From Salpingoeca rosetta (lineage: Eukaryota > Protista > Choanoflagellata), in assembly GCA_033442325.1 (NCBI GenBank), contig JAWQFM010000010.1, positions 1,734,187-1,798,186 on the forward strand: a DNA stretch of 64,000 nucleotides, in the 5' to 3' direction. The translations under genes were made by a program, and so were the position numbers. The notes below the pieces were generated by a model. The model was not told where the DNA came from and did no database searches. It worked only from the letters and a program-made list of their open reading frames with translations. Of this stretch, positions 414 to 64,000 are shown piece after piece; within the stretch, counting starts at the first letter, position 1; every line of letters begins with the position of its first letter.

Positions 414-3220
<2,807 letters not shown>

Positions 3221-3558: not shown

Positions 3559-3589
<31 letters not shown>

Positions 3590-8793: not shown

Positions 8794-8836
<43 letters not shown>

Positions 8837-8847
8837 CATCGCGATTG

Positions 8848-16644
<7,797 letters not shown>

Positions 16645-43697: not shown

Positions 43698-44055
43698 CGC
43701 GACCAGGCAGGCAGCCAAGCTGAGGTTGCAAGGTTGAGGTGTTGTGGTGTGGTGGTGTTTCGCGTTGGTGGTTGGTGCTTCTTGCTGGATTGATGAATCA
43801 TCATGGCACATCACTTCTCCCACGTGCTGTTTGCTCCATGCACGCTTTCATTCATTTCATTCATTGATACATGCGTTCATCAGCATCGGACAGTCGGTGT
43901 GCACGCACGCACGCACGCAGCATGGCATGGCATGGTAGTGGTGGAGGTGCAGGAAGAAGACATATGCGGCAAGCAACACAGCGAAGAAAGAAGAGAGGGT
44001 AAGGGCAACACAGCAACAGCACAAGCACAAGCACAGGTGGCATGACAGGATTGAA

Positions 44056-44761: not shown

Positions 44762-47279
44762 TGTGTGTGTGTGTGTGTGCAGGGCAGACGAGCAGACAGC
44801 ATGGGGACGGGAAACCCGTGGCGGCTCATGGCTGACCTGTCATGAGGTGTTCAGCTGCAACATCTGCGGTGATTAGGCTTGCCTGGCCCTCAATCTCCTA
44901 CATGCAGGTGCATGTGGAAGGAAGTGTGACACAGCGAACAATACCCGGCATCGCCAGCAACAAACACAAACAGACAAACAGCACCAGACAGACAAACAGA
45001 CAGAGGCAGACAGACGCGCGCACACAAACACAAACAGACAAACAGCACCAGACAGACAAACAGACAGACACACACACACACAGAGGCAGACACACACACA
45101 TACACACACAGACAGACAAATCAACATCCGCGCTGGCAAGGCTGACCTGTGTCTCAACGGGCTTTGTGCGCGTTTCCTCCTCGAAACCAGGCGTGTCCAT
45201 GTTGGAGGGATAGTACCCAACAACGCGAATGTTGTATGGCTGTGGCCACACTCGACAAGGTAGATGGGAGGGGGAGAAGGCACGCAATTGGGTGGGTGTG
45301 AGAATGCAGCAAGAAAGACGGGCAGAAAGGTTGACAACAGAACGCATACAGGCGAACAACTGCCTGACACAGACACACACACACACACAGACACAGACAC
45401 CGACACAGACACAGACACACCGACACAGACACCGACACCGACAAACACACAGACACAGACACGACACAGGCAGACACGCAGACCAGGAGTTCGTTGCGGA
45501 GGCAGTCGGTGAGGCCACGAAGGGCGTACTTGGAAGGAGCGTACTGGGAGTAGCCAACCATGCCTGCAAACACGACAGCCGAGCTGACAAACACCACCGT
45601 ACCGCCACCGCTCTTCTTCATGCTCGGCACTGCTGCCTACGTGGATCAGGGAGGCAAGGAGAAGGGGGGGGGGGAGGAGACAAGGCACACAGTATAGCAC
45701 TCGTGTTATGTGAGGAAAGCACAGTGCTCGCCAAAAGCGAGGCGAAAAGAGGGGCGAAATGAGAGGCGATGAGAGGTGAAAAGAGAGAGGTACACCACAC
45801 CCACCCACCCACACAGATACACAGACACACACACACAGACACACACACACACACAGACACACACACACAGACACGCACACATACAGACACATACACACCG
45901 CACCTTTGCTGCGTGAAGGCAGCCAAAGTAGTTGAGGTCCATCTGCTGGCGGTAAACGCTGGTGGGTGTCTCCAGGAAGTAGCCCGGCTTGGCGAGGCCA
46001 GCAGAGCAGATGAGGTACTTGACGGGGCTTGGCGGTGTGATGCGGCGGTGCAGCGTGCATACATCCGTGCAACCATGAGAGGAACAAAACGCAATGAGAA
46101 ACAAACGAGCACGCACAAGGGCACAGACATGAGCGCAGGAAAGGGAGGTCGGCAGTCGTCAAACCAACGTACCCAAACTGCTCGTCCGCTTGTTGCACGG
46201 CCTCGTTCATTTGCTTCTCGTTTGTCACATCACAGGGAAACCCTTGTGCCTGCGATGTGAGTGAGAGTATGTGAGTGAGTATGTGAATGAGTTTGTGAGT
46301 GAGTGAGTGAGAGTATGTGAGTGAGTATGTGCGTGAGTGAGTGAGTGAGTGAGTGAGTGAGTGAGTGAGTGAGTGAGTGAGTGAATGGTGACAGCAGACA
46401 CGTGTGCGCGTGTGAGGAACAGTCAGGGAACGATAATCAACACAGGCGAAAACTGATGGCGCAGTGACACTGTAGCACCTTGGCGGATGGCACGGCGTCA
46501 CGGATCGCCTTCAGTCCCGTATCCACGTTCTTCTGTGATCTGGACACGATTGTCACGCGTGCACCACGCTTCAAGGTGCGCCAGCATGTCGTGGCATGTG
46601 TGTGTGTGTGTGTGTCAGCGGGTGAGCAACTGGCCTGAACACTGAATCTGGTTGGCATTTTGTTGAATGTCATTGGTATTGGTTGTTGTCTCTCTGGTTC
46701 GCTTTTCCAAGCATGTGCCACGCGTGAGATAGGAGTTGAACATGTGCAAGACAAGGCTCTTCAATGGGAGATTTGGGGGAACACAATAACCTGGTTGCTC
46801 GGTATACCTTGGCAAACTTGATGGCGATGCCCAACCCCAGGCCCGTGGTTCCTCCCGTGATGAACACGTGCTTGTCTTTTGCGTCGATCCCTGGCGCCGT
46901 GATCTTGTTCCACAGCCAATTCACCTGAACAGGCGGCGGCGAGTGAGTGAGTGAGTGAGTGAGTGAGTGAGTGAGTGAGTGAGTGAGTGAGTGAGTGAGT
47001 GAGTGAGTGAGTGAGTGAGTGAGTGAGTGAGTGAGTGAGTGAGTGAGTGAGTGAGTGAGTGAGTGAGTGAGTGAGTGAGTGAGTGAGTGAGTGAGTGAGT
47101 GAGTGAGTGAGTGAGTGAGTGAGTGAGTGAGTGAGTGAGTGAGTGAGTGAATGAAAGGGTGGAATGAATCTTGTTGTCCAGCAGACACACACACACACAC
47201 ACATATGCACGCTCACCACGACAAGGACAGCAGCGCCCACTGCAGCCAGTGTCCAGCAGCAGCCACCGCAGCCAAACAT
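44056..47279 (-). CDS. KDSR: 3-ketodihydrosphingosine reductase (FVT1/TSC10)
   Basis: N-terminal TM, HVFITGGTTGLG, LICSAGLAKPGYF, QMDLNYFG, YSQYAPSKYALRGL (YxxxK), MDTPGFEEETRTKP, C-terminal hydrophobic segment, and terminal KKTK* (KKxx ER retrieval signal). Confidence 0.93.
46941..47150. repeat. (GAGT)n, about 52 units; reads (ACTC)n on the KDSR sense strand
   Basis: Perfect tetranucleotide array ending about 15 nt before the exon 2 acceptor. Confidence 0.97.
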
Positions 47280-48147
47280 CTTGCACGCTGTGGTTTATCC
47301 CGGTTTGCCCACTGTGGTAAAAAAAAAGTAAATTGAAATGCACGGAATGATGCATTTGGATAAAAAAATGTGGCATGCACCACCCCACAGCAGGAAACCA
47401 GGCAAACACACACACAACCAAACAAAACCTCGCCCGCCTGCTGCGTCTGCTCTGCTTTGCTTGCAGGCATCATCCCAACACCAATCAAACAACACAACAC
47501 ACACAACAGCGGCAAACAACACAACAACAAGCAAGAAGCAAGCAACAAGGAGGCAGCGCTGCGTCTCTGCTCAACCAACACACACACACACACACCACAA
47601 CACGACCTTGGCTTTGTTGTTGTGTTCCTTGGTGCAGTACCCGGCACTTCAGCAAGCTGCAAAAGTGCAAAGGCACTTGTTTGGCCTGCTTTGGTTGCTT
47701 TGGGTGCTCGCAAGCTGTCCAAGTGCGCGACAAGGCCCTTTCTGATCAGAGCAACACACACACACAGGCCTCAACAACACTCGCACAGGCAGTTGTTTGT
47801 GTTGCTGGCGTATCCTCTCTTTGCATCCAGCATCTTTTCACCACCGCTTCCAACCTTGCAGCCTTTCAGACAACCCTCTCTTTTATATTCTTGGCACTCC
47901 TTTCCCATCTGATTGCCGTCTTCGCTCTTTTCCCGGCTGCGGCGAAGAGTGCTCCTGGCACCCTCTTCTCGCCCCTTCTTGACCCCTGTGTGTGCACGAC
48001 CACGTGTAAACCAGCCACTGCAGCGACCTTCTTGTTTGTTGCAGCTCACAGCACACCATGGCGTGGCAAGCTCTTCGCTGCCGCTGCCAATCCCAGCGAC
48101 TCCGTCGCACCAACTCCAACTCCAACAACAACAACAACAACTGCGGC

Positions 48148-48399
48148 ATGCATGGCGCCACCACATCAGCAGTAGCCGCAGCCACGCGACAGCTTCGATC
48201 GCTGGCTGCTGTGCTTCTGCTGGTTCTTCTGACTTGCTGGGCTCCATTGTCCAGCGCCCAATGCGTGCCCCCAAGCGTTACCACCATCTCTCCACAGGTG
48301 CGTGCATGCGCGTGCGTGTGTGTGTATGTGTGTACGTGTGCGTGTGTGTGCGCGCGTTTGTTTGTGTGTGTGTGTATGTGTGTGTGTGTATGTGTGTGT

Positions 48400-48448
<49 letters not shown>

Positions 48449-51400
48449 TGCTCGTCGAGAATCGCATGTCAACACACTCTTCCTGTGGAAACCCACCATG
48501 CCCATGCTGCCTTGCGGCATTGACCAGCTCTGTCGCCTCGTCAAACACGCCACACACACGCCACACACGCCACACACACAGACACAGACACAGACACACT
48601 CACTCTCTCACACTCTCACACTCTCACACTCTCACTCTCTCACTCTCTCACACACACTCTCACACTCTCACACTCACACACACTCACATGCCCCACTCGC
48701 CACAACACACAAACCAACTTGAATAACACAGGACGGTGTGCTTGGTACTTATGTTACCATTACTGGCTGTGGATTGGGCAGCACAACGCTTGTGTCGCTC
48801 GCCCCTTCTGACCCCATGGCCTCCACTTACGACGCAAACGATGGTGCGCATATGTGTGTGTGTGTGTGGTTGTTGGTTGTGCGCATACATGAGCGCGCGC
48901 GTGTGTGTGTGCACGCATCAATGATGAACGCACTAGGACTGCCCCCGCTTTGTGAGCGTGTGTCTGCGGCCGCTGTTTCAAGCGCAACCGACACTCCAAC
49001 ACAACCGACACACCAACGCACTGAAAGCCGCATTTCCTTCCTCTGTCAGCTCACCCCTCTTCCTTTATTCCCCCTCCTCTCACTTCACGCTCTCCCCCTC
49101 TCATTTCCGTTTGTAGGTGGCGTGCACGCGGTAGTAAGCGCCGCAGCCACTGAGGTTGTGGTGCGCTCGTCTGGTGAAGACGTGCCGACATGCGGTGATG
49201 TGGTCCTCTTCTCAGACGCATCCACCGTCATCACGCGCTTCTCAAACGACACCCACAAGAGCAACCTCAACCCCTTTGAGGTGGGCGCCTACTGCTACAA
49301 CCCAGACAACCTGGAGATTTCAACGGTGTCCCCCACCATGGGCCAGGAAGGCACGGCCATCACCATCACGGGCCGCTTCCCTCCCCGCCATGGTGTTGCG
49401 TCAGCGCTGACAACAGCGCTCGTCGCGGGCAACAACGCCACCGTCGAGTCGTCGGGGTCCTTCTCCGCCATCATTCGCCTCGGCGCCGGTATGGAAGGGG
49501 ACACCGGGCCCGTGCGGGTCATGGCAGAGACGGGCGCCTTCGCCGTGTCAACTGTCAACGTCACGTATGTTGCCCCGGGCAACATCACAAACGTGACACC
49601 CACAGCCGGCCAGCACGGCACCCGCATCACCATCACGGGCACGGGCTTCTTTGGCCTCACAGGCACCGCCGTCACCGCCGTCCTCGTCGACAGCGTTCCC
49701 GCCATCGAAATCGTCATGCAGAACGACACGTACGTGGTGGCCCGCCTCGGCGCCGGCTCCGCAAACGCTGCGGCCGTCGTGCGCGTCGAGTCCGACGACG
49801 GGTCGTACACCCTGTACGGCGACACCTTTGAGAAGCTGGCGGACGGAACGGTTGCAGCCATCACCCCGGCAGCGGCCCAGCCCACCCGGACCATCTCCAT
49901 CACGGGCACCAACCTCATGGGCGACGGCACCACGTTCGTGTCCCACTTCCTCGGCACACACAACGTCACTGCCAACGTCGTGGGCACGCCAACGAACAGC
50001 CTCGTCGTCATCCAGGTCCCGGACGGCGTTGGCTTTGCCCAATACACGGCAACCTCGGAGACGGGCAGCATCGTGCAGTCTGGCGCACAGGGGTTTGCCT
50101 TTGCCAACATCACCAGCATCACACCAAGCCAGGGGCAGGCGGGCACGCGCATCACCCTGGCTGGGTTTGGCATGACCTCCGGCGCAATGTCTGCCAGCTC
50201 CGTCCTCCTCGGTACGGCCGCCGCCACCGTCGTCTCCAGTTCGGCAACCCAGATTGTCGCCACCGTGGGCTCCGCGTCGGCCGGCACCGTATTCCCCACC
50301 GTTGTCGGCACCAACGGCTACAACGTCTCCTCCACCGCCGTCAACTTCACCTACCTGCCGCCGCAGCAAATCAACGCCGTCACCCCCTACTTTGGCCAGC
50401 ACGGCACCCGCGTCAACATCTCGGGCGTCAACCTCCTTGGCGGCGGCAGCACCGTCGTCCAGGTCATGCTTGATGGCATCAACGCAACCATCGAGTCGCA
50501 GTCAGACACGGAGATTATCGTGCGCGCCGGCGTCAACGATCCCGGCGAGGGCGACGTCGTCGTGATCACCGACACGGGCGCGCGGGTCACCCGCACCGAC
50601 GGCTTCCTCTACATCTTCCCGGGCAGCATCACCACCATCAGCCCGTCCAGTGGCCAGGTCGGCACGCACGTCACGCTCTCGGGTACCTCCCTCATCGGCG
50701 GCGGCACGCAGCTGGCGTCTGCCACCGTTGCCGGCGTCGCAGCATCCATCCTCTCGGCCACGGACATCCAAGTCGTCGTGCAGCTTGCAGAGGGTGCCGC
50801 GACCATGGGCACCGTGCGCCTGACCGCCGACACGGGCGCCATCGTCTCCTCTGCGGGCATGTTCACGTACATTGAGCCTGGCAACATCACCGCCGTCTCC
50901 CCTGCACAGGGCGTGCTTGGCACGACGGTCACCATCACGGGCACCAACCTGCTCGGCGGCGCGATGACCCTCTCCAGCGTCACCATCGGCAACGTCTCTG
51001 CCACTGTCACCTCAGCCACAAACACGCAGGTGGTGGTGCAGGCTGGGCACAAGGCCGCTTCCATGGCACCCGAGGACATTGTTATCACCGCCAGCACGGG
51101 CGCGCGCATCAACGGCACCGCGCTCTTCACCTACCAGGAGCCCGGCGTCATCGCCCAGGTGCAGCCAAGCAGCGGCGCATTCGGTACGCGCATCACCATA
51201 ACGGGCACAAACCTGCGCACCAACGGCACGGCCGTCACCAACGTCACCCTCAACGGCGTGCAGGCCACAGTCGTGTCCGAGAACAGCACGCGCGTCGTTA
51301 TCACCGCAGGCTCTTTTGCCGGCGCGGGCGCGGGCGATGTCAAGGTATTCAGCAACCTCGGCACCTACGCCCTCCTCTCCAACGGCTTCACCTACGTCGG

Positions 51401-54400
51401 GCCGCCCCTCATCACAGACGTCAGCCCCGCAGTGGGCATCACCGGCAGCGAGGTCACCGTCACGGGCTCCTCGCTCCTCGCCGGCGGCACGCGCATCGTG
51501 CGCGCCACCCTGGCCAACGTCAACGCCTCGCAGATTCTGATTGGCAACCGCAACTTCATCGTCGTCCTGGTTGCTGGGCAGAACCCAAACCCGTCCGCCA
51601 ACACCACGGGCGACGTTGTGCTGTACACGGACACGGGCGCCGTTGTCACGCTGGCCGGCGCCTTCCGCTACCAGCCGGACGGCAACATCACCCGCGTCAC
51701 ACCGGCCATGGGCCAGGTCGGCACGCGCGTCACCATCCAGGGCACAGAGCTGCTGGGCAACCCGCCCTCGCAGCTGCAGTACGTGCTGCTCGGTGACATT
51801 CGCGCCACCATCGTGTCTGCCACCGACGCCGAGGTCATCGTGACGGCGGGCTCCTCTGTCGAGGCCGGCCCTGTCACCGTGCTCTTGCACACGGAGAGCG
51901 GCGCTGACATCACCCTCCCCTTTGGCTTCACGTACGTTGAGGAGGGTGCCATCTTCAGCATCACCCCGTCCAGCGGCCAGGTCGGCACCGTCGTCACTAT
52001 TCAGGGCAACAACCTCCTCTCCGGCGGCGCGGCCATCAGCACCGCGCTCTTCGGCTCCACGGCCGCCACGGTCCTCAACGCCACAAGCACGCGCGTCACC
52101 GTGCGCGTGCAGAACGCCACCGCCTCCATGGCGCAGAACGTGCGTCTCACTGCAGACACGGGCGGCTTTGTCCTGCGCGAGCGCATCTGGACCTACCTGC
52201 AGCCGGGCGTGGTCACGGCCGTCAACCCGCCCTATGGCCAGTTTGGCACCCGCGTCACCATCACCGGCGAGCGCCTGCTCTCTGGCGGCTCCTCCGTGCA
52301 GGCCGTGCGCTTTGGCAGCGTCAGCCACCACGCCATCGAGTCAGAGTCGCCCACGCAGATTGTCGTGCGTGTCGGCGACAACGAAGGCAACCTCACCGCC
52401 GGCAGCGACATCACCATTGTCGCAAACACGCAGGCCTCCCTCACCGCCCAGGATGTGTGGCAGTGGACCGCGCCCGGGAACATCTCCACCGTTCAGCCAA
52501 ACACGGGACAGTACGGCACACGCATCACCGTCACGGGCACAAACCTCTTTGGCAACGGCACCGCCCTGCAAGAGCTGCGCGTGGGCACCCTCAACGCCAC
52601 CGTCACCAACGCGACGTCCACCCGCGTCGTGGCATCCATCAACAACAACATGGCCACCACGGGCCCCGTCAACGTCATTCTCGAGTCAAACACGGGGGCG
52701 CTCGTTGTCCTTGGCCTCGGCTTCACCTACACCGCCGTGGGCGAGATCCTGAGCGTCTCCCCAGACAGCGGTGCGGCCGGCACCCTCGTCACCATCTCCG
52801 GCCAGCGCCTGCTTGGCGGCGCCGCGGACGTTGCCTCTGTCACCCTCGCCGACGTCTCCGCCACCGTGCTCTCTGCCAACGCCACCCAGGTCGTGGTCGA
52901 GGCAACGACAGCAGCGGCAGCCGGCGCCGGGGACGTGGTCATCACGGGCACGACTGGCGCCCTCGTCTCAAAGACGACGGGCTTCACCTACGTGGAGGCA
53001 CCCAACATCACTGACGTTACGCCCGCAGAGGGAACCTTTGCCACGCGCGTCACAGTCACGGGCACAAACCTCCTCGCCGGCGGCACCGCCTTTGTCACCG
53101 GCACCGTGGGCGGCATTCCCGCCATGCTCACCACCGCAGACAGCAACACGCAGATTGTGCTGGTCACCCCGAACGTCACCGCCCTCGGGGCTGCCCAGGT
53201 TGCCTTCACCACAGACACGGGTGCCGTGGTGCAGGCATCGAACCTGTTTACCTACCGTGCACGCGGCAGCGTCGCCAGCGTCACTCCCGTCTTTGGACAG
53301 GTCGGTACGCTGGTCACCATCACAGGCCCCAACCTGCGGTCGTACGGCGCCGCTGTCGATGCCGTCGCCTTCAATGGCACCGCCGCCACCATTTCCTCGC
53401 AGAACAACACCCACGTCATCGTGGCCGTGGGCGAGTCGTCCGTGGAGGGCCTCGTCAACGTGCGGCTCACGGCAGACACGGGCGCATACATTGACGCACT
53501 CAACGCGTTCACCTACGTCATGCAGGGGAACATCTCCCTTGTGTCGCCAAACTCTGGCCAGGTGCAGACGCGCGTCACCATCACGGGCACCCATCTCCTC
53601 GGCAACGGCACCAGCCTCGCCTCGGTCACGCTGGCCGGCGTGGCAGTCGATTCCATTGAGGTGCAAACCTCTTCCATGGTCGTCGTGCGTGCGGGCGCAC
53701 GTACAACCGCCATCACTGGCGACGTGGTCCTCACCGCAGACACCGGCGCCACCGTGACGCTTGAGAACGGGTTCTCCTACATCACCCCGGGCGCCATCAC
53801 GGGCATCAGCCCCGCGCAGGGTCAGCTCGGCACCCGCATCACCATCACAGGCACGGGCCTCTTTGGCGGCGGCTCTGCCGTGCAGAACGTCACGTTTGGC
53901 GGCGTGGACGCGCTCGCCATCCTGTCTGCGACAAACGCTTCTGTCGTTGCTCGTGCCCCTGTCATGAACGCCGGTGCCGTGGCCATCGCCATCATCTCGG
54001 ACACGGGCGCAACCACCACCTCAACTGCCGGCGCGTTCACGTTCGACGCACCTTCCGCCATCTCCAGCATCAGCCCAAGCTCCGGCACCGCGGGCACCCT
54101 GGTCACCGTGACGGGCACAAGCTTGTTTGGGGTGAGCAATGGCGCCAGCATCGTCGCGGGCCTTTTCGGAACCGCAAACGCCACCGTGCAGTCGTTCACA
54201 TCCACACAGGTGGTACTGGTGGCGCCACAATCCGCCGCGTCCAACGTCACCATCACCATTGATGCCGACAGCGGCGCGCGCACGGTGAGCACGGACATGT
54301 TTCGGTTCCTCGCCCCCGGCAACATCACCGACTTTGCTCCAAAGATGGGCGTGACCGGAACCCACGTCACCATCGTCGGCTCCAACTTGCTGGGCGGCGC

Positions 54401-57400
54401 ATCAACCGCCCAGTCGGTGACCGTGGCCGGCGTTGCAGCCTCTGTGGTCAGCGCCACGGCGTCCAGCATTGTCGCTGCTCTTGGCGAGGGTACAACCCAG
54501 GCTGGCCCCATTGTCGTCACGGGCGGCGAAGGCTCCCTGCTGCAGAGCGCAGCGCAGTTCCAGTACATCAACCAATCGGTGATTCTCAGCGTCAGCCCTT
54601 CCTCTGGGCAGTCCGGAACCGCTGTGCAAATCGTCGGCGAGGCCCTGCGTGCTGGCGGCGTCAATGTCTCCTCGGTCACGCTCGCTGGCATCGCTGCAAC
54701 CATCGTGTCCGAAAACGACACTGTGGTCTCGGTCACCGCGGGCGTGAACCCGTCTGGCAACGCAACCACGGGCGACGTTGTCGTGTCAGCGTCAAACGGT
54801 GGCCGCACCGTCCTGGCAAACGCCTTCTCGTACCAGCAGAGTGGAAGCATCGTGTCTGTGGTTCCTTCCTCTGGCCAAGGAGGTACATATGTCACCATCA
54901 CAGGCACTGACCTCCTGGCTGGCGGTACCAACCTCACCTCCGTGCAACTGGGCACCGTGCAGGCGACCATTGTCAGTGCTTCGTCAACAACGGTCGTTGT
55001 TCGCGCTGGCGACGGCCCAGCGGTGCAAACAGCGGTGGACGTCATGCTCACCTCAAACACCAACTCCTTCACCTCAAAGACCAACGGGTTCACGTACCTC
55101 AAGCCCGGTGAGGTGTTTGCCGTCGACCCCCAGCGCGGGCAGGGCGGCATTCAGGTGCGCATTGGTGGTGTTGACCTGTGCGGCGCTGGCTCTGTGAACC
55201 TCACATCCGTCACCCTGGCAAACATCAGCGCCACCATCGACTCGGAGGAGGGCTGTTTCCTCGTCACCGTCACGGCTGGCACCACAGACTTCAACACGTC
55301 CGTGGTTGGCGACCTGGTGCTCGTCGGCAACACGGGCTCCACGGTTCGCCTGCAGAACGCGTTCACATATGTCCCGTCCGGGCTCATCTCGTCGGTCAGC
55401 CCGGGGGTTGGCCAGGGCGGGCAGGCCGTGACGGTTCGTGGCCGTTCACTTCTTGGCGGCGGCAACAGCCTCACAGCTGCGTCCCTTGCGGGCGTCCCGG
55501 CCACGGTCATCAGTGCAAACTCAACATACGTGTCGCTGGTGGCCAACAGCGGTCCTATCTCCTCCACGCGCAGGGTGGGCGATGTCAGCCTGACTTCAGA
55601 CATTGGCGTGACTGTCACGGCCACAAACGGCTGGTCATATGCCGTCATCTCCTCCATCCAGCCAACCAGCGGCCAGGGAGGCACATTCGTCACCATCGCT
55701 GGGCAGGACCTTCTTGCTGATGGAGCTGGCATCACCGCCGTCACCCTTGCCGGCGTGCGCGCGTCATCCATCGTCTCGGCCAACGACACGCAAGTCGTTG
55801 TCCGCGCAGCCGCGCAGGCAGTGACTGTTAACCAGGCCGGCGTGGTGGAGCTGACAACAGACAATGGGCAGAGCGTCCTCTCAAGGTCAGGCCTCGACAA
55901 CAGCGACGTGCAGCGGTTCACGTACCGGCCACCAGGAGCGATTACCAGCGTGAGCCCGGCGCAGGGGCAGGCAAACACCACGGTGACCATCACCGGCACT
56001 CGCCTGCTCGGGTACGGCACAAGCGTGCAGTCTGTCACGTTTGGAAACACAACAAGCGGCACCGTCATCTCTGGAACAGACACGAAGGTTGTTGTGGTCG
56101 CACCAGAGTCCGCGGATGTCGGCGCAGTAAACATCACCATCACATCAAACACGGGTGCGATCGTTGAAACCGATGCCGCATTCACCTACGTTGCACAGGC
56201 AAGCATCAGCGGAGCAACGCCTGGTGTTGGGCAGGGTGGCACGCGGGTGACGGTGACGGGTGTGTCGCTGCTTGGCGGCGCGACGACGCTGCGGGACGTG
56301 ACGCTTGCTGGCGTGTCTGTGCGCGAGATTGTGTCGTTCAACGACACGCAGGTAGTGGTGGTTGCGGCAGCGCACGGGAGCGCGGTGTCTGGGGATGTTG
56401 TGGTGCAGTCTGCCAACGGGGCGTTTGTGAGCCTGGTTGGCGGGTTCAACTACAGCGAGCCTGGTGCTGTTGCGAGTGTGAGCCCCGACAGCGGACACGC
56501 GGGGACGCGCGTTGTGATTGAGGGCACACGGCTGCTCGGGAGCGGGTCGAGCCTTGTGTCTGTGACGCTGGGCGGCGTGAGCGTGGCTTCGATTGTGAGC
56601 GGGAACAACACGCGCGTTGTTGTGGTTGCGGCTGCTGGGAGCGCCGGTGCTGGGGACGTTGTTCTGACGGCCAACACTGGTGCGGAGGTGATTGCGACTG
56701 GCGGGTTCACGTATGTGGCCGCGGGCGCGATTGACCAGGTGCAGCCTGCGTCTGGCCAGTTTGGGACGCGCGTGACGATCAACGGGACGAACCTGCTTGG
56801 AGGCGGGTCGTCTGCTGCGACTGTGCGGCTTGGCGGCGTTGCGGCGATGGTTGTGTCTGGGACGTCGACGGAGGTGGTTGTTGTTGCTCGGAGCGGGAGC
56901 GCCGGTGTTGGCGACGTTGAGATTGTGGCTGACACGGGGGCTGTTGTGAGCAAGAGCAACGCGTGGGAGCAGCTTGAGGATGGCGTGATTACGAGCGTTG
57001 TTCCGGCGCAGGCGCAGAAGGATGCGCGCGTGACGATCCAAGGTGCGCGGCTGCTGGGCGGCGGCCAGGACATTGCGCGGGCTGTGCTTGCTGGCGTTGA
57101 TGCGACGTACGAGAGCGGGAGCGGCAGCGACACGGAGGTAGTTGTTGTGGCTGCGCTTGGCACGGCTGGTGCGAACGGCAGCGTGCTGCTTGTTGCTGAC
57201 ACTGGCGCCGAGGTGTCGCTTTCGCTCGGGTTTGAGTATGTTGCGCGCGGGAGCATCAGCAGCGTGGAGCCGAGCACGGGCTCTGCGGGGACGCTTGTGA
57301 CGATCAGCGGCAGCAACCTGCTGAGCGGCGGCGCGAGCATTGAGGGCGTGACGCTCGCTGGTGTTGCAGCTGCACAGGTTGTGAGCGGCAACGACACGGT

Positions 57401-60400
57401 GATTGTTGTTGAGGCAGGACAGCAGTCGAGTGCGGTGAGCGGGATGGTTGTGACGACCTCTGACACTGGCTCGACGAGCGTGCTGTCGAGTGGGACGGCG
57501 TTTACGTACATTGCGCCCCCGAGCATCGACACTGTGTCGCCTGCGAGCGGGCAGGAAGGGACGCGCGTGACGCTGAGCGGGCAGAACCTGCTGTGCGGCG
57601 GGTCGAGCGTGCGCACTGTGACGCTTGCGGGCGTTGCTGTTGGCACGGTTGTGAGCGAGAGCGACACGTCTGTTGTTGTTGACGCTGCGCCCGGTGCTGC
57701 TGGCAATGGCAGTGTGCGGATTGAGGCTGACACGGGGGCGTTTGTTGAGCTTGCTGATGGCTGGACGTACATTGAGGCTGGCAGCGTGAGCAGCGTTGAG
57801 CCTGCGACTGGGCAGCGTGGGTCTGTTGTTGTGATCCGCGGGACGAACCTGCTTGGCGGCGGCAGCGACGTGTCGAGCGTGACGCTTGCCGGCGTTGAGG
57901 TGACGTCGATTGACAGCGCCAACGCGACGGTTGTCGTTGTTGTTGCTGGCGGCCGGAGCACGGCTGGCGCTGGGGACGTTGTGCTGATGTCTGACACGCG
58001 GGCGACGGTGACTGCGAGCGGGGCGTTTACGTACCTGGAGCCTGGCAACATCACGAGCGTGAGCCCGAGCGTGGGCCAGGACGGCACGCGGGTTGTGATT
58101 GAGGGCGAGCGGCTGCTTGGCGACGGGGACAATGTGATGAGCGTGACGCTGGCTGGGGTTGCGGCGACGGTGACTGGCGCGTCGCAGAGCCAGATCAACG
58201 TGACGGCGCATGCGTCGACGGCCAAGACGGGCGACGTCGTTGTTGTTGGCAACACGGGCATCATTGTGAGCAGCACCAACGCGTGGACGTTTGGCACGCC
58301 TGGTTACGTTGAGGGTGTTGATCCTGGGCGTGGTGTTGCTGGCACGGAAGTGCTGATCTATGGCAACAATCTTCTTGGTTATGGTTCATCTGTGGCGAGC
58401 GTGACGCTCGATGGTATTGCTGCGAACATCACGTACCAAAGTGACGTGCTGATCAAGGTCATCGCAAATGACGGCGTTGCTGGTGCGGCCGGGGACATCG
58501 TCGTCACCGCCAACACGGGTGCTTTTGGGACTGCGGGGAACGCGTGGACATACGTCAGTGCACCCAACATTACATCAGTATCTCCTTCATCGGGCACCCT
58601 CGGAACCCTTATCACCATCCAGGGCACGTCCTTGCTCGCTGGCGCTGACAGCATCGACTTTGTGACGCTTGCTGGTGTGACAGCGACCATCACCTTCCAA
58701 AACGACACCCTCGTGGTCGTTCGGGCCGGAAGTGGCAGTGCCCGCACCGGCGATGTTGTGATTTCCACTGACAACGGTGCAACCATTCGCAATCGGAACG
58801 CTTTTACATTTGTTCAACTCGGCGAGATCCACAGCATTGAACCAACGAGCGGTATCGGTGGCACACTTGTCACGATCACTGGAAGCCAGTTGTTGCTCGG
58901 CGCACAAGGTCTTTCATCTGTCACGCTGTTCATGACCGCGGCGAGCGTGATCAGTGCAAGCAATAGCATGGTGGTTGTTCGTGCAGGCACTCCAACTCTG
59001 CCAGTAGTGGTTCAGAGCGCGGCGTCTGCCAACCCGACGACAGGCGACGTAATTGTCACCGCAACCAACGGTGCAACGATTCGGCGTACAAGCGGCTTCA
59101 CGTACATCATGTCACCGAACATCACTGACATCACACCGCCGAGCGGCCAGGTTGGGACGCGGGTGACGATTGTTGGCAGCGGTCTGCTTGCGGGCGGCAG
59201 CAGCGTGTCGAACGTGACGCTGGCCGGGGTAGCTGCGGAGAGCGTTGTGAGCGCCAACGACACGAGCGTCGTTGTAGTTGCAGGGAGCGGCAGTCCCGGG
59301 AACGGCAGCGTGACGGTGACGGCGGACACGGGTGCGTCGTACAGCAGCGACAGCGTGTGGACGTATGTTGAGGCGAGCACGATTGACAGCTTTGCACCTG
59401 TGACTGGCCAGGAGGGCACGTATGTGACGATCCGTGGGCAGCGGCTGTTTGGCGGCGGCAGCACGGTTTCGCGCGTTGTGCTTGCTGGCGTGGATGCTGC
59501 GGTGCAGGCTGGCGGCAACAGCACGTATGTAGTGGCGCGTGCAGCAGCGAGCGTTGCTGGCGCAGGCCGTGTTGTGGTTGAGAGCGACACTGGAGCGCGG
59601 GCTGTTGCGACGGGCGACTTTACGTATGCGGACGCGGGCGTTGTGACGACGCTGATGCCAGCGAGCGGGCAGCGCGGGACGCGTGTGACGATTGTTGGCG
59701 AGCGGCTGCTTGGCGGCGCGATGTCGCCGGCTGTTGTGCGGCTTGGCGGCCGCGCTGTGATGAGCGTTGTGAGCGCCAACTCGACCATGGTTGTGGTGCG
59801 GGCGTCGAACGGCACGGTTGGCACGGGCGACGTTGAGATTGAGTCTGTGAGCGGGGCCATTGTGCGCGGCGTTGGGCTGTGGGAGCAGCTTGCCGAGGGC
59901 CAGGTGACGGGCGTGTCGCCGTCGAGCGGTGCTGCTGGTACGCTGGTTACGCTGTTTGGCAGCTCCCTGACACTGGGCTCCAACACCGTGACGCTGCTGA
60001 GCGGTGGTGTATCCACGTCGGTTGTCTCTCGCAACGCCACCCATGTTGTGTTTGAGCTTCCTGCGTCTCTTCCCACCGGCTCCGTTACGTTTGCCTTGCG
60101 CGCAGACACGCTTGCAGAGGCGTCTCTCGTCGATCAGTTTACGGTGCTTGCATCTGGATCTGTCACGTCTGTGGTTCCGTCACCCTCTATCCAGGGGGCA
60201 CGGGTCACCATTCACGGCACTGGTCTGCTCGGTGGCGGTACGGCTGTAACAACAGCGTTGTTTGCATCCGAGGCAGCGACAATCCTCTCGTCCAGCGAGA
60301 CGACTGTTGTTGTGATTCTGCCTGGCCTCGATGCGCCAGGACCAGTGAACATCACACTTGTCTCCGACACTGGTGCGACCGTGTTCGTGACAAACTCGTT

Positions 60401-63400
60401 CTCGTACGCGTACTCCCCGTCCATTGACACGCTTGCGCCCACCAGTGGGCAGGAAGGCACCCGGGTTACGCTGCAAGGTTCGCTCTTGCTCGCTGGCGGC
60501 AGCAACATCACCCGCGTGTTGCTGGATGGCCGCGACGGCACTGTACTGACGTCAAACGACTCGATGGTGACGTTTGCTGTCCCAGCCAACGCACAGGGCC
60601 CTGCTGTGGTCCAGCTCATTGCAGACACGGAGGCCACCTACAACCTGACTTCGAGGTTCACGTACCTGCGTCGGCCGCGCATCAGTGCCCTTGCGCCATC
60701 GTCTGGCCAGTACGGCACGCGCGTGACGGTGAGTGGCGTGGAATTGCTTGGTGGCGGCTCGGGCGTTGCCTCGCTGACCGTGGCTGGTCAAGAGGCGCAC
60801 TCGATTGAGAGCGCTTCCAACGAAACGATTGTGTTCCGTGCCCCACAGGGCACGCAGGGCACGCAAGGCACGGTGGTGGTGACGGCCGACACGGGCGCAG
60901 TTGCGCGCGGCACACCAACGTTCTCGTATGTTGAGGCCGGCAGCATCAGCACCGTGTCGCCATCGACTGGACAGGCAGGCACCCTCGTGACTGTGACGGG
61001 CTCCAACCTGTTTGGTCTGCTGAATGGCACAGCTGTGGTGAACGCCACGCTTGCTGACATACCTGTGGCGGCGGTGGTGTCGTCCTCAGCCACGCAGGTG
61101 GTGCTCAAGGCTGCGTTGTCTGCGGTGGGCATGACGGGCTCTGTGTCGCTCGTGGCCGACAGTGGCGCGATTGTGGCCCGCTCTGCGGCTTGGACGTACA
61201 TTGCACCCGGTGCCATCACCTCTGTTGACCCCGGCGTGGGTCAGGTGGGCACCTATGTCACGCTTCGCGGCACCAACCTGCTTGGCGGCGGTGCCTCGGC
61301 GACGCAGGTGAGGTTTGGCGGCGATGCGGGCACCGTTGTGAGCGGCAACTCCACCGTGGTTGTTGCCCGCGGCGCCAATGGCACTGCAGGCACCGTGGGT
61401 GTTGCGATTGTGGCCGATACGGGGGCAACGGTGTCGCTGCCCGGTGCATGGCTGCGGCTGGCATCTGGCAGTGTGTCGAGCGTCGCGCCTGCCTTTGGAC
61501 AGGGCGGCACGCGAGTGACCATCACCGGCGTCGGGCTTCGTGGAAACGGCACCCGCGTGACCAAGGTGACGCTGCGCGGGCTTGAAGCCACCGTGATGAG
61601 CGAGAGCGACGATCAAGTGGTGGTCGCTGCTGCTGCCAGCCCAAGCGCTGGTGTTGGCGACGTGGTGCTTGAGTCTGACACGGGTGCGCAGGTGACCTCG
61701 ACGTCTGCTTGGGAGTATGTTGAGCCTGCACGTGTGGACAGCGTGTCGCCAGCCTCTGGCCAGCGCGGCACTCGTGTCACGGTGCTTGGCGCCGGCTTGC
61801 TTGCCGGCGGTGCAAACGTGACCCGCGCAAGCCTGGGCGGCACAAACGCCACCCTCCTCTCAGCCAACGACACCCGGGTTGTGCTGGCCGCGGGTGATGC
61901 TGATCCACAGGTCCTGGTTGGCCTGCGCCTGGAAATGGGCTCTGGCGCTGTGGTGACACACGCGAATGCCTTCACGTACCTGACGCGCGGCAACATTGAT
62001 TCCGTGACGCCTGCGAGCGCCAGTGCGGGTGCGCTGGTGACCATTACGGGCTCCTTGTGCGGCGGTGGCAGCTCGATTGTGGACGTGCTGTTTGACACGT
62101 TCAACTCGACCATCGAGGCGTCCAGCTGCAGCCAGGCGCGCGTGCGCGTTCCCGACACCGGCCTCAACACGTCGGTGTCTGTGAGCGTGGTGTCTGACAC
62201 GGGCAGCATTGTCGAGCTGGTTGGCGGGTTCACCTACCTTGCGGATGGCGCCATCTTGTCGATCTCTCCACCCGCGGGCCAGTCTGGAACCGTGGTTGAG
62301 ATTCGCGGCGTGAACATGCTTGGCGGGTCAGCCGGCATCTCGTCCCTCAAGCTGGCCGGCTCCAACGTGCTGGTGGATGTGGTGAGCGACACGTTCATCA
62401 ACGCGACCGTGCTCACGGGCTCTGGGCAGGGCGACGTGACGCTGGTGTCGCAGGCGGGCGTGACGCTTCGCCTGCGCAATGGGTGGACGTTCAGCCGCGT
62501 GCAGCAGCTGGAGCCGAACAGCGGCATGCGTGGCACGGTTGTCACAATCCGCGGCCTCGCACTGCTTGCCGGTGGGTCCCGCGTTGCGTCGGCGCGCCTG
62601 GGCGGCCAACCCGTTGCCAGCATCGTGTCCAACTCCTCCAGCGAGGTTGTTGTGGAGGCGGCTGCGAACCTGGTGACGGCGGACACACGCGGCGACGTGG
62701 TTCTGACGATGGACAACGGGCAGACGGTGTCGCGCTCCAACGTGTGGACATACAAGCCGCCGGGCTCGATTGACCTCGTTGAGCCTGGCAGCGGCCAGAG
62801 CGGCACGGTTGTCACGATTAGCGGCACCGAGCTGCTTGGGTACGGCACCAACTACACGTCTGTGTCCCTCTCTGGCGTTCCCGTGCAGTCGATCCTGTCT
62901 GCAAACAACACGCGCGTGGTGGTGGTTGCAGCGGCAAGCGCCACGCAGCAGGCCGGCGACGTCGTGCTTGTCTCTGACACGGGCTCGCGGGTTGTCCTTG
63001 CTGACGGCAACGCGGGCACGTTCCTGCAGGACGGGCTCTGGCAGTATGTGGCACCCGCAGAGCTGACGAGCGTGTCGCCGGCCGAGGGCCAGGTCAGCAC
63101 CCTCGTCACCGTCACCGGCACGGGCCTGCGCGGTGGCGGCAACGCCATCGACCAGGTGCTGCTGTCTGGTGTGGAGGCGGACGTGGTGAGCGAGTCCGAC
63201 ACACAGCTGGTCGTGCGGGCGCAAGCGGGCATGCCGACCGCCGTGGCCGGCAGCATTGAGATTCTGGCGGACACGGGCGCGCGCGCCGTGTTTGAGCAGG
63301 CGTGGCGCTACGTGCCTGCAGGCAACGTGTCGTCCGTGTCGCCGTCAACTGGACAGCAAGGAACGCTGGTGACCATTTCCGGCACGCGCCTGCGCGGCAA

Positions 63401-64000
63401 CTCCACGGCTGTCGAGCGTGTGCTGCTGGCTGGCGTGGAGGCGACGGTGCTGTCTGAGAGCGACGCCCTGGTGGTGGTGTCAGCGGAGGCCTCTGCCGGC
63501 ACCAGCGCTGGCGACGTGGTGCTGATTGGCAGCACGGGCGCCACGGTCACGGCCAGCACGGCGTTCAGGTACCTGACGCCGGCAAACGTGACGCTGGTGA
63601 GCCCGTCCATGGGTCAGCTCGGAACGCTGGTAACCATCACGGGCACGGCGTTGCTGGGCGGCGGCTCCAACATCTCGCGCGTGCTGTTCAACTCCACGTC
63701 CTCACTGCGGGTGCTGTCCGCAAGCGACACGGTTGTTGTGGCGGAGTCGCCGCGTTCTGGTGTTGCTGGCACGGTTGACCTGACGCTGATTGCGGACACG
63801 GGCGCCTTCACAGCAGTGACGGGCGGCTGGACGTTCCTTGAGCCCGGTGTTGTGGACAGCGTGGATCCCCCGCAGGGCCAGGTCGGCACATCTGTGACGA
63901 TCCGCGGACGCAACCTGCTGCAGGGCGCAATGAACGTGACGGCGGTGCGCTTTGGCGATGTGCTGACCCGCATCATGAGCTTCAACTCCACGCAGATTAT
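48148..64000 (+). CDS. Giant secreted or cell-surface protein with about 57 or more tandem IPT/TIG (Ig-like) domains; 3'-truncated by the window
   Basis: Exon 1 48148-48297 (MHGATT...[19 protein letters not shown] signal peptide), exon 2 48732-48843, exon 3 from 49117 to beyond 64000. The frame at 49119 equals the frame at 63960, and the ORF track lists no closed ORF in that frame, which fits one open frame of about 4960 codons. The ~86-aa repeat consensus is GxIxxVxPxxGQxGTxVTIxGxxLLGGG...GDVxxxADTGAxV...FTY. Confidence 0.92.

What the first reader, a model, noticed from the sequence alone, without database searches (positions are those of the whole stretch)
48148..64000. Giant (>5000 aa) secreted IPT/TIG-repeat protein encoded mostly by one exon of at least 14.9 kb, absent from the ORF track
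Seen: signal peptide, two small exons, then an unbroken frame of about 57 diverged ~86-aa repeats rich in NxS/T sequons (NIT, NVT, NAT, NGT), with no other domain and no end in the window. Known: IPT/TIG arrays occur in plexins, MET and PKHD1/PKHD1L1 with far fewer copies, and PKHD1L1 coats stereocilia. Inference: at about 4 nm per Ig-like domain this is a glycosylated filament over 200 nm long. It is a candidate for collar microvillar links, flagellar vane, extracellular matrix or prey capture. An intron-free exon this long is unusual where most neighbouring exons are 30-250 nt.
Basis: partly seen in the sequence, partly recalled or inferred. Interest (0 to 1): 0.8.

Follow-up and report, generated by a model that had tools for sequence, protein, structure and literature searches.

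The report
Giant secreted 59-IPT-domain choanoflagellate protein
This is a real gene, already annotated but never studied (most likely Salpingoeca rosetta PTSG_03923), for a 5,256-residue secreted protein that is only a signal peptide plus 59 plexin-type IPT domains, with a lone cysteine at each end and no membrane anchor; it probably forms a thin glycosylated extracellular filament.

Summary
Frame 48723-63998 (+) is stop-free for 5,092 codons (chance about 1e-57). With two small 5' exons it encodes a signal peptide and 57 head-to-tail IPT/TIG units (period 87-88 aa, Pfam PF01833 only).

The "absence from the ORF track" is a listing artefact, because ORFs that run off the window are not listed. 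The gene is almost certainly S. rosetta PTSG_03923 (5,178 aa as annotated). That model starts at an internal Met and lacks the signal-peptide exon. The full protein has 59 units and ends about 625 nt past the window, with no TM or GPI signal.

- **Selection:** differences from other DNA samples are 21 synonymous to 6 non-synonymous, with no indels (pN/pS 0.11).
- **Fold:** AlphaFold models of 2 and 4 units are very confident (pLDDT 97, pTM 0.85-0.87). The closest solved structures are plexin/MET IPT tandems.
- **New here:** a family hallmark of one Cys just after the signal peptide and one within the last 1-6 residues (8 of 8 complete C-termini), which suggests end-linking.
- **HGT label:** the published "bacterial HGT" call rests on orphan MAG contigs that look eukaryotic.

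Function (extracellular matrix, collar or flagellar-vane filament) is untested. Sense-strand RNA evidence is weak. The scan noted a 38-IPT paralog on another piece of this genome.

The parts
48058..48147 (+). Possible 30-codon N-terminal extension from an upstream in-frame ATG (A at -3, G at +4). It is Arg/Asn-rich, and the start codon is therefore ambiguous.
   Evidence: ORF 48058..48726; sequence read. No 5' RNA data.
48148..48297 (+). Exon 1: ATG, signal peptide (n-region with Arg, 16-residue hydrophobic core, S-S-A|Q-C), then the A strand of IPT unit 1. The conserved N-terminal Cys codon is at 48262-48264.
   Evidence: highest Kyte-Doolittle peak of the protein, 2.1. Both named relatives have the same layout. 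This exon is missing from the public gene model.
48298..48731 (+). Intron 1 (GT..AG), filled with GT and CA/CT microsatellites.
   Evidence: The IPT motif is restored across the junction (unit 1 = model residues 41-131, 43.8 bits).
48732..48843 (+). Exon 2 (112 nt, phase-1 donor): B-C strands of IPT unit 1. It contains the Met (48816) at which the public model starts.
48844..49116 (+). Intron 2 (GT..AG, 273 nt). It is stop-free and a multiple of three, so retention would keep the frame, but its product is low-complexity and unlike IPT.
   Evidence: The public model splices it out. RNA run X34 has low depth (0.27) in a bin lying wholly inside it.
49117..64000 (+). Exon 3, cut by the window end. 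By the annotated product it continues to about window coordinate 64625, 15,509 nt in all.
   Evidence: GC 0.648 and GC3 0.773 match the published values for PTSG_03923, 0.647 and 0.768.
49308..64000 (+). IPT/TIG units 2 to 57, head to tail with a period of about 88 aa. Units 58-59 and the C-terminal E-C-V end lie beyond the window.
   Evidence: AlphaFold pLDDT is 97 for 2 and 4 units.

Best explanation
This is a functional eukaryotic gene, almost certainly Salpingoeca rosetta PTSG_03923. Its true product is about 5,256 aa: a cleaved signal peptide followed by 59 consecutive plexin-type IPT/TIG domains and nothing else.

Shown: the frame, the domain array, purifying selection, the Ig-like fold, the absence of any other Pfam domain or hydrophobic anchor, the enrichment and positional conservation of N-glycosylation sequons, and membership of a choanoflagellate family of giant poly-IPT proteins.

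Inferred: the protein enters the secretory pathway and is heavily N-glycosylated, possibly also O-mannosylated on the IPT core motif. It is released as a stiff, thin rod. At roughly 4 nm per Ig-like domain (general knowledge), 59 domains give about 240 nm, with 516 kDa of peptide. With no head domain and no anchor, the array itself is the working part: a structural extracellular filament of the cell coat, matrix, collar or flagellar apparatus.

More speculative: the single conserved Cys at each end makes intermolecular disulfides that join rods end to end or tie them to a partner.
For: Frame and anatomy.

Domain identity: Pfam TIG only, over the whole length. The unit profile hits plexin-A IPT best among solved structures (1e-13).

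Fold: the 2-unit model has pLDDT 97.4 and pTM 0.87, and the 4-unit model 97.2 and 0.85. Foldseek's best matches for two domains are plexin-A and MET IPT tandems, TMq 0.6-0.7.

Selection: 27 exonic differences from other DNA samples split 21 synonymous to 6 non-synonymous, pN/pS 0.11, with no indel or stop.

Secretion without anchor: the only TM-like peak is the N-terminal signal sequence, and the product ends 1 residue after unit 59.

Family: S. rosetta PTSG_12890 and PTSG_13198, M. brevicollis MONBRDRAFT_29861, a EukProt transcriptome ORF and metagenome contigs all show the same 87-88 aa units and the same Lys and Cys poverty.

Conserved array: there is unit-by-unit collinearity with relatives. 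For example, shift -7 against P0006 gives 0.457 identity against a background of 0.386, sd 0.013.

Sequons: 102 against 48 +/- 6 expected, with a hot spot at unit column 48 in all three named proteins from two species.

Terminal cysteines: Cys makes up 0.1-0.9% of these proteins. Yet 3 of 3 known N-termini have a Cys 2-5 residues after the predicted cleavage site. And 8 of 8 complete C-termini have a Cys in the last 1-6 residues. Five of those eight were confirmed as true stops inside contigs.
Against: Sense-strand expression in this organism is not shown. Two RNA runs gave only 30 and 3 reads on the 5' 5.9 kb. All were in one orientation, which in the commonest stranded protocols would mean antisense RNA, and the library type could not be calibrated.

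The runs guessed to be RNA turned out to be DNA, because their contigs contain the introns.

The 3' end lies outside the window and was taken from the database gene call, not read as DNA. The signal peptide was judged by eye and hydropathy, not by SignalP. An upstream in-frame ATG (48058) could make it a signal anchor.

Rod length and stiffness are inferred from pTM and general domain size, because no coordinates were available. The disulfide-linking idea rests on conservation only. The N-terminal sample is three proteins.
Confidence: 0.72

Rival explanations
1. The gene was acquired from bacteria by horizontal transfer, as listed for PTSG_03923 and its paralogs by Matriano et al. 2021. On this reading it is in essence a bacterial-type giant adhesin.
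For: In supplementary file 2 of PMC7971027 it is scored 'FOREIGN'. The best hit is PHR02316.1 'Sulfitobacter sp.' at 37% identity (E = 0), against 31% (1e-99) for the sponge Amphimedon. It is intron-poor (1 annotated intron in 15.5 kb) with high GC3. Genuine bacterial isolates (Kineosporia) do carry 3,800-4,500-aa IPT arrays.
Against: The 'Sulfitobacter' protein (P0037) lies on a 7,653-nt MAG contig holding one ORF that is open from the first base to the last. It has a eukaryote-style Cys-rich furin-like module and no bacterial neighbour. The 'Planctomycetes' hit is likewise a 7.1-kb ORF-only contig. Both score like family members against the unit HMM (72-76 bits per unit, period 87-88). Kineosporia scores 17 bits per unit with period 85. 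Related metagenome contigs end in lower-GC, UTR-like 3' flanks. Among solved structures, the unit profile is closest to animal plexin IPTs. The Alien Index uses E-values, which grow with the number of repeats aligned.
Confidence: 0.08
2. It is a membrane receptor of the plexin / fibrocystin kind (the automatic GO label is 'semaphorin receptor activity'). Alternatively it is a type II surface protein held by an uncleaved N-terminal signal anchor, standing about 240 nm off the membrane.
For: IPT domains are the stalks of plexins, MET/RON and PKHD1/PKHD1L1, and the best structural matches are plexin and MET. If translation starts at 48058, a 48-residue Arg-rich segment precedes the hydrophobic core, which fits the positive-inside rule for a signal anchor. 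S. rosetta vane filaments are reported to be anchored in the flagellar membrane (PMC9671500).
Against: There is no Sema, PSI, G8, PbH1 or PA14 domain, no C-terminal TM segment and no cytoplasmic domain anywhere in the 5,256 aa. The hydrophobic core is only 16 residues and is followed by a canonical small-x-small cleavage motif. The same layout is seen in both named relatives, which have short n-regions.
Confidence: 0.1
3. It is an adhesin: a sticky, long-reach surface or theca component for substrate attachment, cell-cell contact in colonies, or bacterial prey capture, rather than a purely structural fibre.
For: Giant arrays of Ig-like domains commonly act as adhesins or capture filaments in bacteria. 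Foldseek lists the Aureispira grappling-hook protein GhpA among the 4-unit matches. The protein is acidic (pI 4.5) and glycan-rich. S. rosetta has several paralogs, as expected for surface proteins with divided roles.
Against: There is no terminal binding or head domain. pN/pS of 0.11 and unit-by-unit collinearity argue for conservative rather than diversifying evolution. Nothing here addresses binding.
Confidence: 0.2
4. The locus is a silent or decaying relic, and the RNA reads come from an antisense or read-through transcript.
For: All 33 RNA reads have the first mate on the + strand, which in dUTP-type libraries means RNA from the - strand. Depth is below 1x. Run X34 also shows low depth in a bin that lies wholly inside intron 2.
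Against: A 15.5-kb frame with no stop and no indels between samples, with 21 of 27 differences synonymous, is not compatible with decay. The family is transcribed in another choanoflagellate: P0007 is a complete ORF from a transcriptome assembly. The laid stretch is the 5' end of a roughly 16-kb mRNA, which oligo-dT or RT-PCR libraries cover poorly.
Confidence: 0.04

Closest known systems
Choanoflagellate giant poly-IPT proteins: S. rosetta PTSG_12890 (6,350 aa, partial), PTSG_12887 (3,425 aa), PTSG_13198 (partial), and M. brevicollis MONBRDRAFT_29861 (5,763 aa). All are uncharacterised.
   Same: Signal peptide followed at once by a Cys. Uninterrupted 87-88-aa IPT units and no other domain. 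Lys about 0.3% and Cys about 0.2%. A sequon hot spot at the same unit position. Few introns. A C-terminal Cys where the end is known.
   Different: Only 34-48% identical. The unit number differs (59 here, against at least 73, 64 and 38). This protein ends just after the F strand of unit 59 (E-C-V). M. brevicollis and several others end with a conserved W-T-Y-D-x-P-S-N-I-T-x-x-C stub.
Plexin-A, MET and RON ectodomain IPT tandems
   Same: Best sequence match (plexin-A2, 1e-13) and best fold match (TMq 0.6-0.7 over two domains). They share the G-x-x-[ILV]-T-[ILV]-x-G core, which in animals carries TMEM260 O-mannose.
   Different: Those proteins have 3-6 IPTs set between Sema/PSI domains and a TM plus cytoplasmic signalling domain. 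Here there are 59 IPTs and nothing else. The four-unit path differs from the curved plexin stalk (TMq 0.44). The Pro-to-Gly spacing upstream of the acceptor Thr is two residues longer than in the published sequon.
Fibrocystin (PKHD1) and fibrocystin-L (PKHD1L1, the stereocilia coat protein)
   Same: Very large extracellular glycoproteins rich in IPT domains (12 and 14). PKHD1L1 forms a surface coat on actin-based protrusions (abstracts).
   Different: No G8, PbH1 or PA14 region and no TM segment. It has four times as many IPTs. No fibrocystin chain appeared among the PDB sequence hits at E below 0.001.
Giant Ig-like-array filaments of bacteria (for example Aureispira GhpA grappling hook, Kineosporia IPT/TIG proteins) and titin-type Ig chains
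   Same: The working principle: dozens of short-linked beta-sandwich domains make a long, thin, stiff extracellular rod.
   Different: Not close kin: 17 bits per unit against 60-78 within the family. Bacterial examples carry anchors or head domains, and Kineosporia proteins carry extra N-terminal regions.
Gel-forming mucins and von Willebrand factor (a relative was auto-named 'mucin-19')
   Same: Giant secreted glycoproteins that polymerise through terminal disulfides. This is the analogy for the end-linking idea.
   Different: No PTS low-complexity region and no VWD, cystine-knot or other Cys-rich terminal domains. Here there is just one Cys per end. The Ser/Thr sit in beta strands.

Membership tests
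IPT/TIG domain superfamily (Pfam PF01833, E-set Ig-like fold) | Match to the Pfam TIG model above the gathering score | tested here: met
   225-272 bits per 1,000-aa piece against a cut-off of 20.9, with 8-11 stretches each.
IPT/TIG domain superfamily (Pfam PF01833, E-set Ig-like fold) | Seven-stranded Ig-like beta sandwich | tested here: met
   AlphaFold pLDDT 97 with 7 strands per unit. Foldseek probability is 1.00 to plexin and MET IPT domains.
Plexin / MET / RON receptors | Sema and PSI domains N-terminal to the IPTs | tested here: not met
   No family other than TIG passes a Pfam threshold in any piece.
Plexin / MET / RON receptors | Single TM segment and a cytoplasmic GAP or kinase domain | tested here: not met
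   The product ends 1 residue after unit 59, and there is no hydrophobic segment apart from the signal peptide. The 3' end was taken from the database model, not from DNA.
Fibrocystin / PKHD1L1 | G8 domains, parallel beta-helix (PbH1) repeats and a C-terminal TM segment | tested here: not met
   Pfam scan of the whole protein shows TIG only. Hydropathy scan.
Choanoflagellate giant poly-IPT family (PTSG_12890 / MONBRDRAFT_29861 type) | Signal peptide, then an uninterrupted array of 87-88-aa IPT units with no other domain, high unit-HMM scores, and Lys and Cys poverty | tested here: met
   78 bits per unit, 95% coverage, K 0.3%, C 0.2%, the same as the relatives.
Choanoflagellate giant poly-IPT family (PTSG_12890 / MONBRDRAFT_29861 type) | One Cys just after the signal peptide and one within the last six residues (a hallmark proposed here) | tested here: met
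   Q-C at mature positions 1-2 and E-C-V at the end. 3 of 3 N-termini and 8 of 8 C-termini in the family carry it.
Gel-forming mucins | Pro/Thr/Ser-rich low-complexity tandem repeats with VWD and cystine-knot domains | tested here: not met
   Folded IPT units throughout, and no VWD or CK match.
TMEM260 O-mannosylation substrates | Core acceptor context: Gly at -4, hydrophobic residue at -1 and +1, Thr/Ser at 0, Gly at +3 in the B strand of an IPT (bioRxiv 10.64898/2026.09.21.753134) | tested here: met
   44 of 59 units carry G-x-x-[ILV]-T-[ILV]-x-G, against 0.8 expected in shuffles. The motif is also the IPT core, so the match is expected of the fold.
TMEM260 O-mannosylation substrates | A TMEM260 (DUF2723) enzyme in the same organism, and mannose found on the Thr | not tested
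   No TMEM260 sequence could be obtained through the tools. [quoted passage not shown]
Bacterium-derived (HGT) genes of S. rosetta | Closest relatives are bona fide bacterial genes | tested here: not met
   The 'bacterial' best hits are ORF-only MAG contigs with eukaryote-like features. Isolate-genome bacterial arrays are far more distant. No phylogeny was made.

The most novel reading that the evidence does not exclude
This protein, alone or with its paralogs, is the subunit of the roughly 3.5-nm filaments of the choanoflagellate flagellar vane, or of the fine mesh between collar microvilli. On this reading, 240-nm poly-IPT rods are joined through their single N- and C-terminal cysteines into micrometre-long, glycan-shielded, protease-resistant fibres. 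The composition of the vane is an open question (PMC9671500). The filament there is about as thick as a glycosylated Ig-like chain would be expected to be (general domain size; not measured on the models), extends more than 1-3 um, and resists proteinase K. This protein is Lys-poor, has about 100 sequons and lacks any anchor or head domain.
Probability: 0.12. Interest if true: 0.8.

Novelty: new member of a known kind. Interest (0 to 1): 0.42.

Why it matters
[quoted passage not shown] A conserved family of secreted proteins made of 40-70 IPT domains and nothing else shows the domain being used as a building block of extracellular fibres before, or beside, its use in receptors.

The work here yields four concrete, checkable points:
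- The public model of PTSG_03923 lacks its signal-peptide exon.
- The family has a lone conserved cysteine at each terminus, which gives a simple handle for testing polymerisation.
- The automatic label 'semaphorin receptor activity' is unfounded.
- The published bacterial-HGT call for this family probably rests on misbinned eukaryotic contigs.

It also gives a short list of knock-out candidates for the unknown material of the flagellar vane and collar mesh in a species where CRISPR works.

Tried and rejected
- **Fetching the 3' end.** So the 3' end was never read as DNA.
- **RNA support from indexed runs.** The runs guessed as RNA (X8 and others) are DNA, because their contigs carry intron 2. 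The two true RNA runs gave 33 reads in one orientation.
- **The 'joint' 53800>49611.** This is only a 42/45-nt similarity between two units.
- **Recent tandem duplication or concerted evolution.** Rejected: TRF is silent, and units within the protein are no more alike than units between species.
- **Ciliary-gene promoter.** No RFX X-box lies near the start. The single one-mismatch hit in the window is at 13513, fewer than expected by chance.
- **ESM Atlas feature search.** It returned only generic IPT clusters.
- **Literature.** No paper text names PTSG_03923, PTSG_12887, PTSG_12890, PTSG_13198 or MONBRDRAFT_29861. One accession was a guess of mine and should be ignored.
- **Alignment A2.** The overlapping 4-unit windows came out of register and were discarded in favour of A3.
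- **Mucin and PKHD1/plexin membership.** Rejected on domain content.
Full report
**Observation**

The + frame from 48723 to 63998 has no stop for 5,092 codons. The two other + frames over exon 3 carry 155 and 83 stops. With the local base composition the chance of such a run is about 1e-57. GC rises from 0.55 at codon position 2 to 0.77 at position 3. There are no N runs in the region. The ORF listing omits this frame only because ORFs that run off the source are not listed.

**Gene model**

Reading 47700-49320 gives the following layout.
- An ATG at 48148 opens a typical signal sequence: Arg-containing n-region, 16-residue hydrophobic core, then S-S-A|Q-C.
- A GT donor follows base 48297. The intron is packed with GT and CA/CT microsatellites.
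- Exon 2 is 48732-48843 and ends in a phase-1 donor.
- A 273-nt intron follows, and exon 3 starts at 49117.

The spliced product has no stop. Its first IPT unit is rebuilt across both junctions: the self-HMM matches residues 41-131 at 43.8 bits. The database gene call P0001 uses the same exon 2/3 junction, but it starts at a Met inside exon 2 and so lacks the signal peptide.

An in-frame ATG at 48058, in good context, would add 30 Arg/Asn-rich residues. The start is therefore not settled.

Intron 2 is stop-free and a multiple of three. That is why the raw open frame begins at 48723.

**Domain anatomy**

- An HMM built from the protein itself finds 57 units in the window, 56 whole and one cut. 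Units are 81-94 aa long, linkers are mostly 4 aa, and no gap exceeds 20 aa.
- Every piece of the protein matches Pfam TIG (PF01833) far above threshold and no other family.
- P0001 carries two further units and ends one residue after unit 59.
- With exon 1 added, the protein is 5,256 aa. The mature chain is 5,219 aa, 516 kDa and pI 4.5. Lys is 0.3% and Cys 0.2%.
- The only TM-like hydropathy peak is the signal sequence, and there is no C-terminal hydrophobic tail.
- TRF sees no 260-nt DNA repeat.
- Units average 37% identity (maximum 60%). Neighbouring units are no more alike than distant ones.

**Which gene it is**

The word search returned a 100%-identical 5,178-aa protein on a 1.89-Mb contig with its source masked. 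It also returned relatives in S. rosetta (PTSG_12890, 39%) and M. brevicollis (MONBRDRAFT_29861, 34%).

Supplementary file 2 of Matriano et al. 2021 (PMC7971027) lists EGD83315 / PTSG_03923 / F2U798. The entry gives PF01833, a CDS of 15,537 nt, 5,178 aa, one intron, GC 0.647 and GC3 0.768. I measure GC 0.648 and GC3 0.773 on exon 3. I take the window to be S. rosetta and the gene to be PTSG_03923, with about 95% confidence.

The sequencing-run table fits a much-sequenced laboratory species, with studies from 2010 to 2026. That matches PTSG_12887, which is 10,278 nt.

By the annotated length, exon 3 is 15,509 nt and the stop lies near window coordinate 64625. In this genome the median gene has five introns and only 8.8% have none. 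The upstream neighbour, a short-chain dehydrogenase on the - strand, is indeed split into small exons.

**Is it a working gene?**

Contigs of two other DNA samples differ from the window at 27 exonic sites. Of these, 21 are synonymous and 6 conservative, giving pN/pS of 0.11, and there is no indel or stop. This is strong evidence of purifying selection on exactly this frame.

Direct RNA evidence is weak.
- The runs guessed to be RNA were DNA.
- Two genuine RNA-seq runs gave 30 and 3 reads over the 5' 5.9 kb, covering 15 and 4 of 30 bins.
- All reads have the same orientation. That argues against DNA carry-over.
- In the commonest stranded protocols, however, that orientation would mean antisense RNA. 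I could not calibrate the library.
- The laid stretch is the far 5' end of a roughly 16-kb mRNA, which many libraries cover poorly.

A family member from another choanoflagellate is a complete ORF in a transcriptome assembly (P0007).

**Fold**

AlphaFold2, using in-register alignments of units, gives pLDDT 97.4 and pTM 0.87 for two units, and 97.2 and 0.85 for four. Each unit has seven strands. A high pTM across four domains joined by 4-residue linkers suggests a defined, stiff arrangement. I had no coordinates to measure the rise per unit.

The best two-domain Foldseek matches are plexin-A and MET IPT tandems, with TMq 0.6-0.7. Bacterial SGBP-B proteins match one domain only. Over four units the best TMq is 0.44, to plexin-A1 IPT3-6, so the longer path differs from the curved plexin stalk. 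Titin I-band and the Aureispira grappling-hook protein appear as general analogues.

The unit profile's best sequence hit in the PDB is plexin-A2 at 1e-13.

**Glycosylation**

There are 102 N-x-S/T sequons against 48 +/- 6 in shuffles. A hot spot at unit column 48 (N-D/x-T before strand E) occurs in 21 of 58, 29 of 71 and 36 of 63 units of the three named proteins. A second hot spot lies at column 3 in this protein.

In 44 of 59 units the B strand reads G-x-x-[ILV]-T-[ILV]-x-G (0.8 expected). These are the core determinants reported for TMEM260 O-mannosylation of IPT domains. The Pro-Gly spacing upstream is two residues longer than in the published sequon, and the motif is also simply the IPT core. 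Whether S. rosetta has the enzyme was not tested. I record this as an idea only.

**Terminal cysteines**

Cys is very rare in the family. Despite that, the mature N-termini read Q-C, Q-P-C and D-L-A-P-C in the three proteins whose N-terminus is known.

All eight complete C-termini carry a Cys within the last 1-6 residues. This protein ends E-C-V and M. brevicollis ends T-E-C. The transcriptome ORF ends C-V-A-S. The five metagenome relatives end N-C-T-G-N, V-C-F, I-C-I, V-C-V-N-P-K and A-C-A.

For those five metagenome relatives I confirmed real stop codons inside the contigs. The 3' flanks that follow are 10-25 GC points lower than the coding sequence.

Six of the eight share a stub, W-T-Y-D-x-P/A-S-N-I-T-x-x-C. 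That is the A strand of a next unit, then Cys, then the stop. At 0.1-0.9% Cys, eight out of eight is far beyond chance.

A single free Cys at each end of an anchorless rod is most simply read as a site for intermolecular disulfides: end-to-end joining, or attachment to a partner. This is inference.

**Relatives and the HGT label**

Matriano et al. scored PTSG_03923 and its paralogs as 'FOREIGN' because the best hit was a 'Sulfitobacter sp.' MAG protein.

- That protein (P0037) sits on a 7,653-nt contig made of one ORF, open from the first base to the last. It starts and ends in the same Cys-rich furin-like module and has no neighbouring gene.
- A 'Planctomycetes' MAG hit is likewise an ORF-only 7.1-kb contig.
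- Against my unit HMM these two score 72-76 bits per unit with an 87-88-aa period, like choanoflagellate proteins (60-78). IPT arrays from Kineosporia isolate genomes score 17 bits per unit with an 85-aa period.
- A further large group of 2,400-2,600-aa relatives with growth-factor-receptor Cys-rich domains lies on a Mb-scale contig beside a Pre-SET/SET gene, which is a eukaryotic setting.

The bacterial-origin call is therefore probably an artefact of misbinned eukaryotic contigs, and of E-values that grow with repeat number. I did not build a tree.

Unit-by-unit collinearity with relatives shows that the array is old and that units keep their individual identity. The diagonals are P0006 at shift -7 (0.457 against 0.386 +/- 0.013), P0004 at shift -21, and PTSG_12890 at shift +7.

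**What it most likely does**

- *Shown:* a secretory signal, 59 Ig-like domains, no other module, no anchor, dense conserved sequons, conservation under purifying selection, and a family confined (as far as named sources go) to choanoflagellates and unnamed environmental eukaryote-like contigs.
- *Inferred:* a glycosylated, acidic, Lys-poor rod about 240 nm long that acts as a structural extracellular fibre, possibly end-linked by disulfides.
- *Unknown:* where it sits.

One concrete possibility is the flagellar vane. In S. rosetta the vane is a bilayer mesh of roughly 3.5-nm filaments reaching more than 1.2-3 um. It is resistant to proteinase K and of unknown composition (PMC9671500). The thickness and protease resistance fit a glycan-covered Ig-like chain. 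Against this, nothing links this gene to the flagellum, there is no RFX site near the promoter, and there are at least four paralogs. I put this reading at about 0.12.

**Comparison and verdict**

At domain level this is a plexin-type IPT protein. It is not a plexin, MET, fibrocystin or mucin, because every defining extra domain and the TM segment were looked for and not found. It works like the giant Ig-like-array filaments known from bacteria and from animal matrix or muscle.

The gene and its Pfam content are already public, and nobody has characterised it or its family. I classify it as a new member of a known kind. Interest is moderate (0.42), raised by four points:
- the terminal-cysteine hallmark;
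- the corrected 5' end of the gene model;
- the doubt cast on the HGT call;
- the testable link to the vane and collar question.

- Read laying was given 5,901 letters.
- Nothing resembling a human contig was met.

Noticed in passing
It would prepend 30 Arg/Asn-rich residues including an (AAC)6 run, and could turn the signal peptide into a long-n-region signal or a signal anchor.
   Followed up: partly
window 48844-49116: Intron 2 is 273 nt, a multiple of three and free of stops in the coding frame, so intron retention would not break the frame. RNA run X34 has low depth (0.27) in a bin lying wholly inside it.
   Followed up: partly
L002:1-7653 (NVUC01000185.1, labelled Sulfitobacter sp. MAG): The contig is a single ORF, open end to end, of 26 IPT units. 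The same Cys-rich furin-like letters occur at both contig ends. This suggests a larger gene made of super-repeats (Cys-rich module plus about 26 IPTs), and a eukaryotic contig binned into a bacterial MAG.
   Followed up: partly
L004:8001-15239 and about 100 similar proteins: A large set of 2,400-2,600-aa proteins combines about 20 IPT units with GF_recep_IV and furin-like Cys-rich domains. They lie on contigs of up to 3.35 Mb, here next to a Pre-SET/SET gene and further TIG ORFs. This is an unnamed eukaryotic lineage with many such genes.
   Followed up: no
PMC7971027 supplementary file 2: S. rosetta has a still larger IPT-containing gene, PTSG_11840: 8,549 aa, 29 introns, PF08007 plus PF01833. 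The automatic GO term 'semaphorin receptor activity' is attached to the pure-IPT genes without any Sema, PSI or TM domain.
   Followed up: no
window 45100-47200 (- strand): A short-chain dehydrogenase gene (adh_short match, with a T-G-x-x-x-G-x-G motif near 46800) is split into small exons by microsatellite-rich introns. These include a 208-nt CTCACTCA-type repeat at 46941-47148, which reads as T-H-S-L repeats in ORF lists.
   Followed up: partly
window 5113-8202 (+) and 42792-43823 (-): A 1,030-codon open frame with a protein kinase domain (Pkinase, 1e-43), and a 343-aa multi-pass membrane protein with DUF7789 (4.5e-22).
   Followed up: no
whole protein and relatives: Lysine is almost absent in every family member: 17 Lys against 177 Arg in 5,256 aa here, and 0.1-0.8% across the family. 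This goes beyond what GC content alone would suggest. It would blunt Lys-directed proteases and Lys-based cross-linking.
   Followed up: partly
L003:22-13776: A metagenome relative is called as three consecutive + strand IPT ORFs in different frames (1664-6574, 6532-9678, 9682-13776), so the gene is at least 12 kb, interrupted by frameshifts or short introns. A further TIG-matching ORF at 22-1644 is called on the - strand. The last + ORF ends with the family's S-N-I-T-x-x-x-C stub.
   Followed up: no
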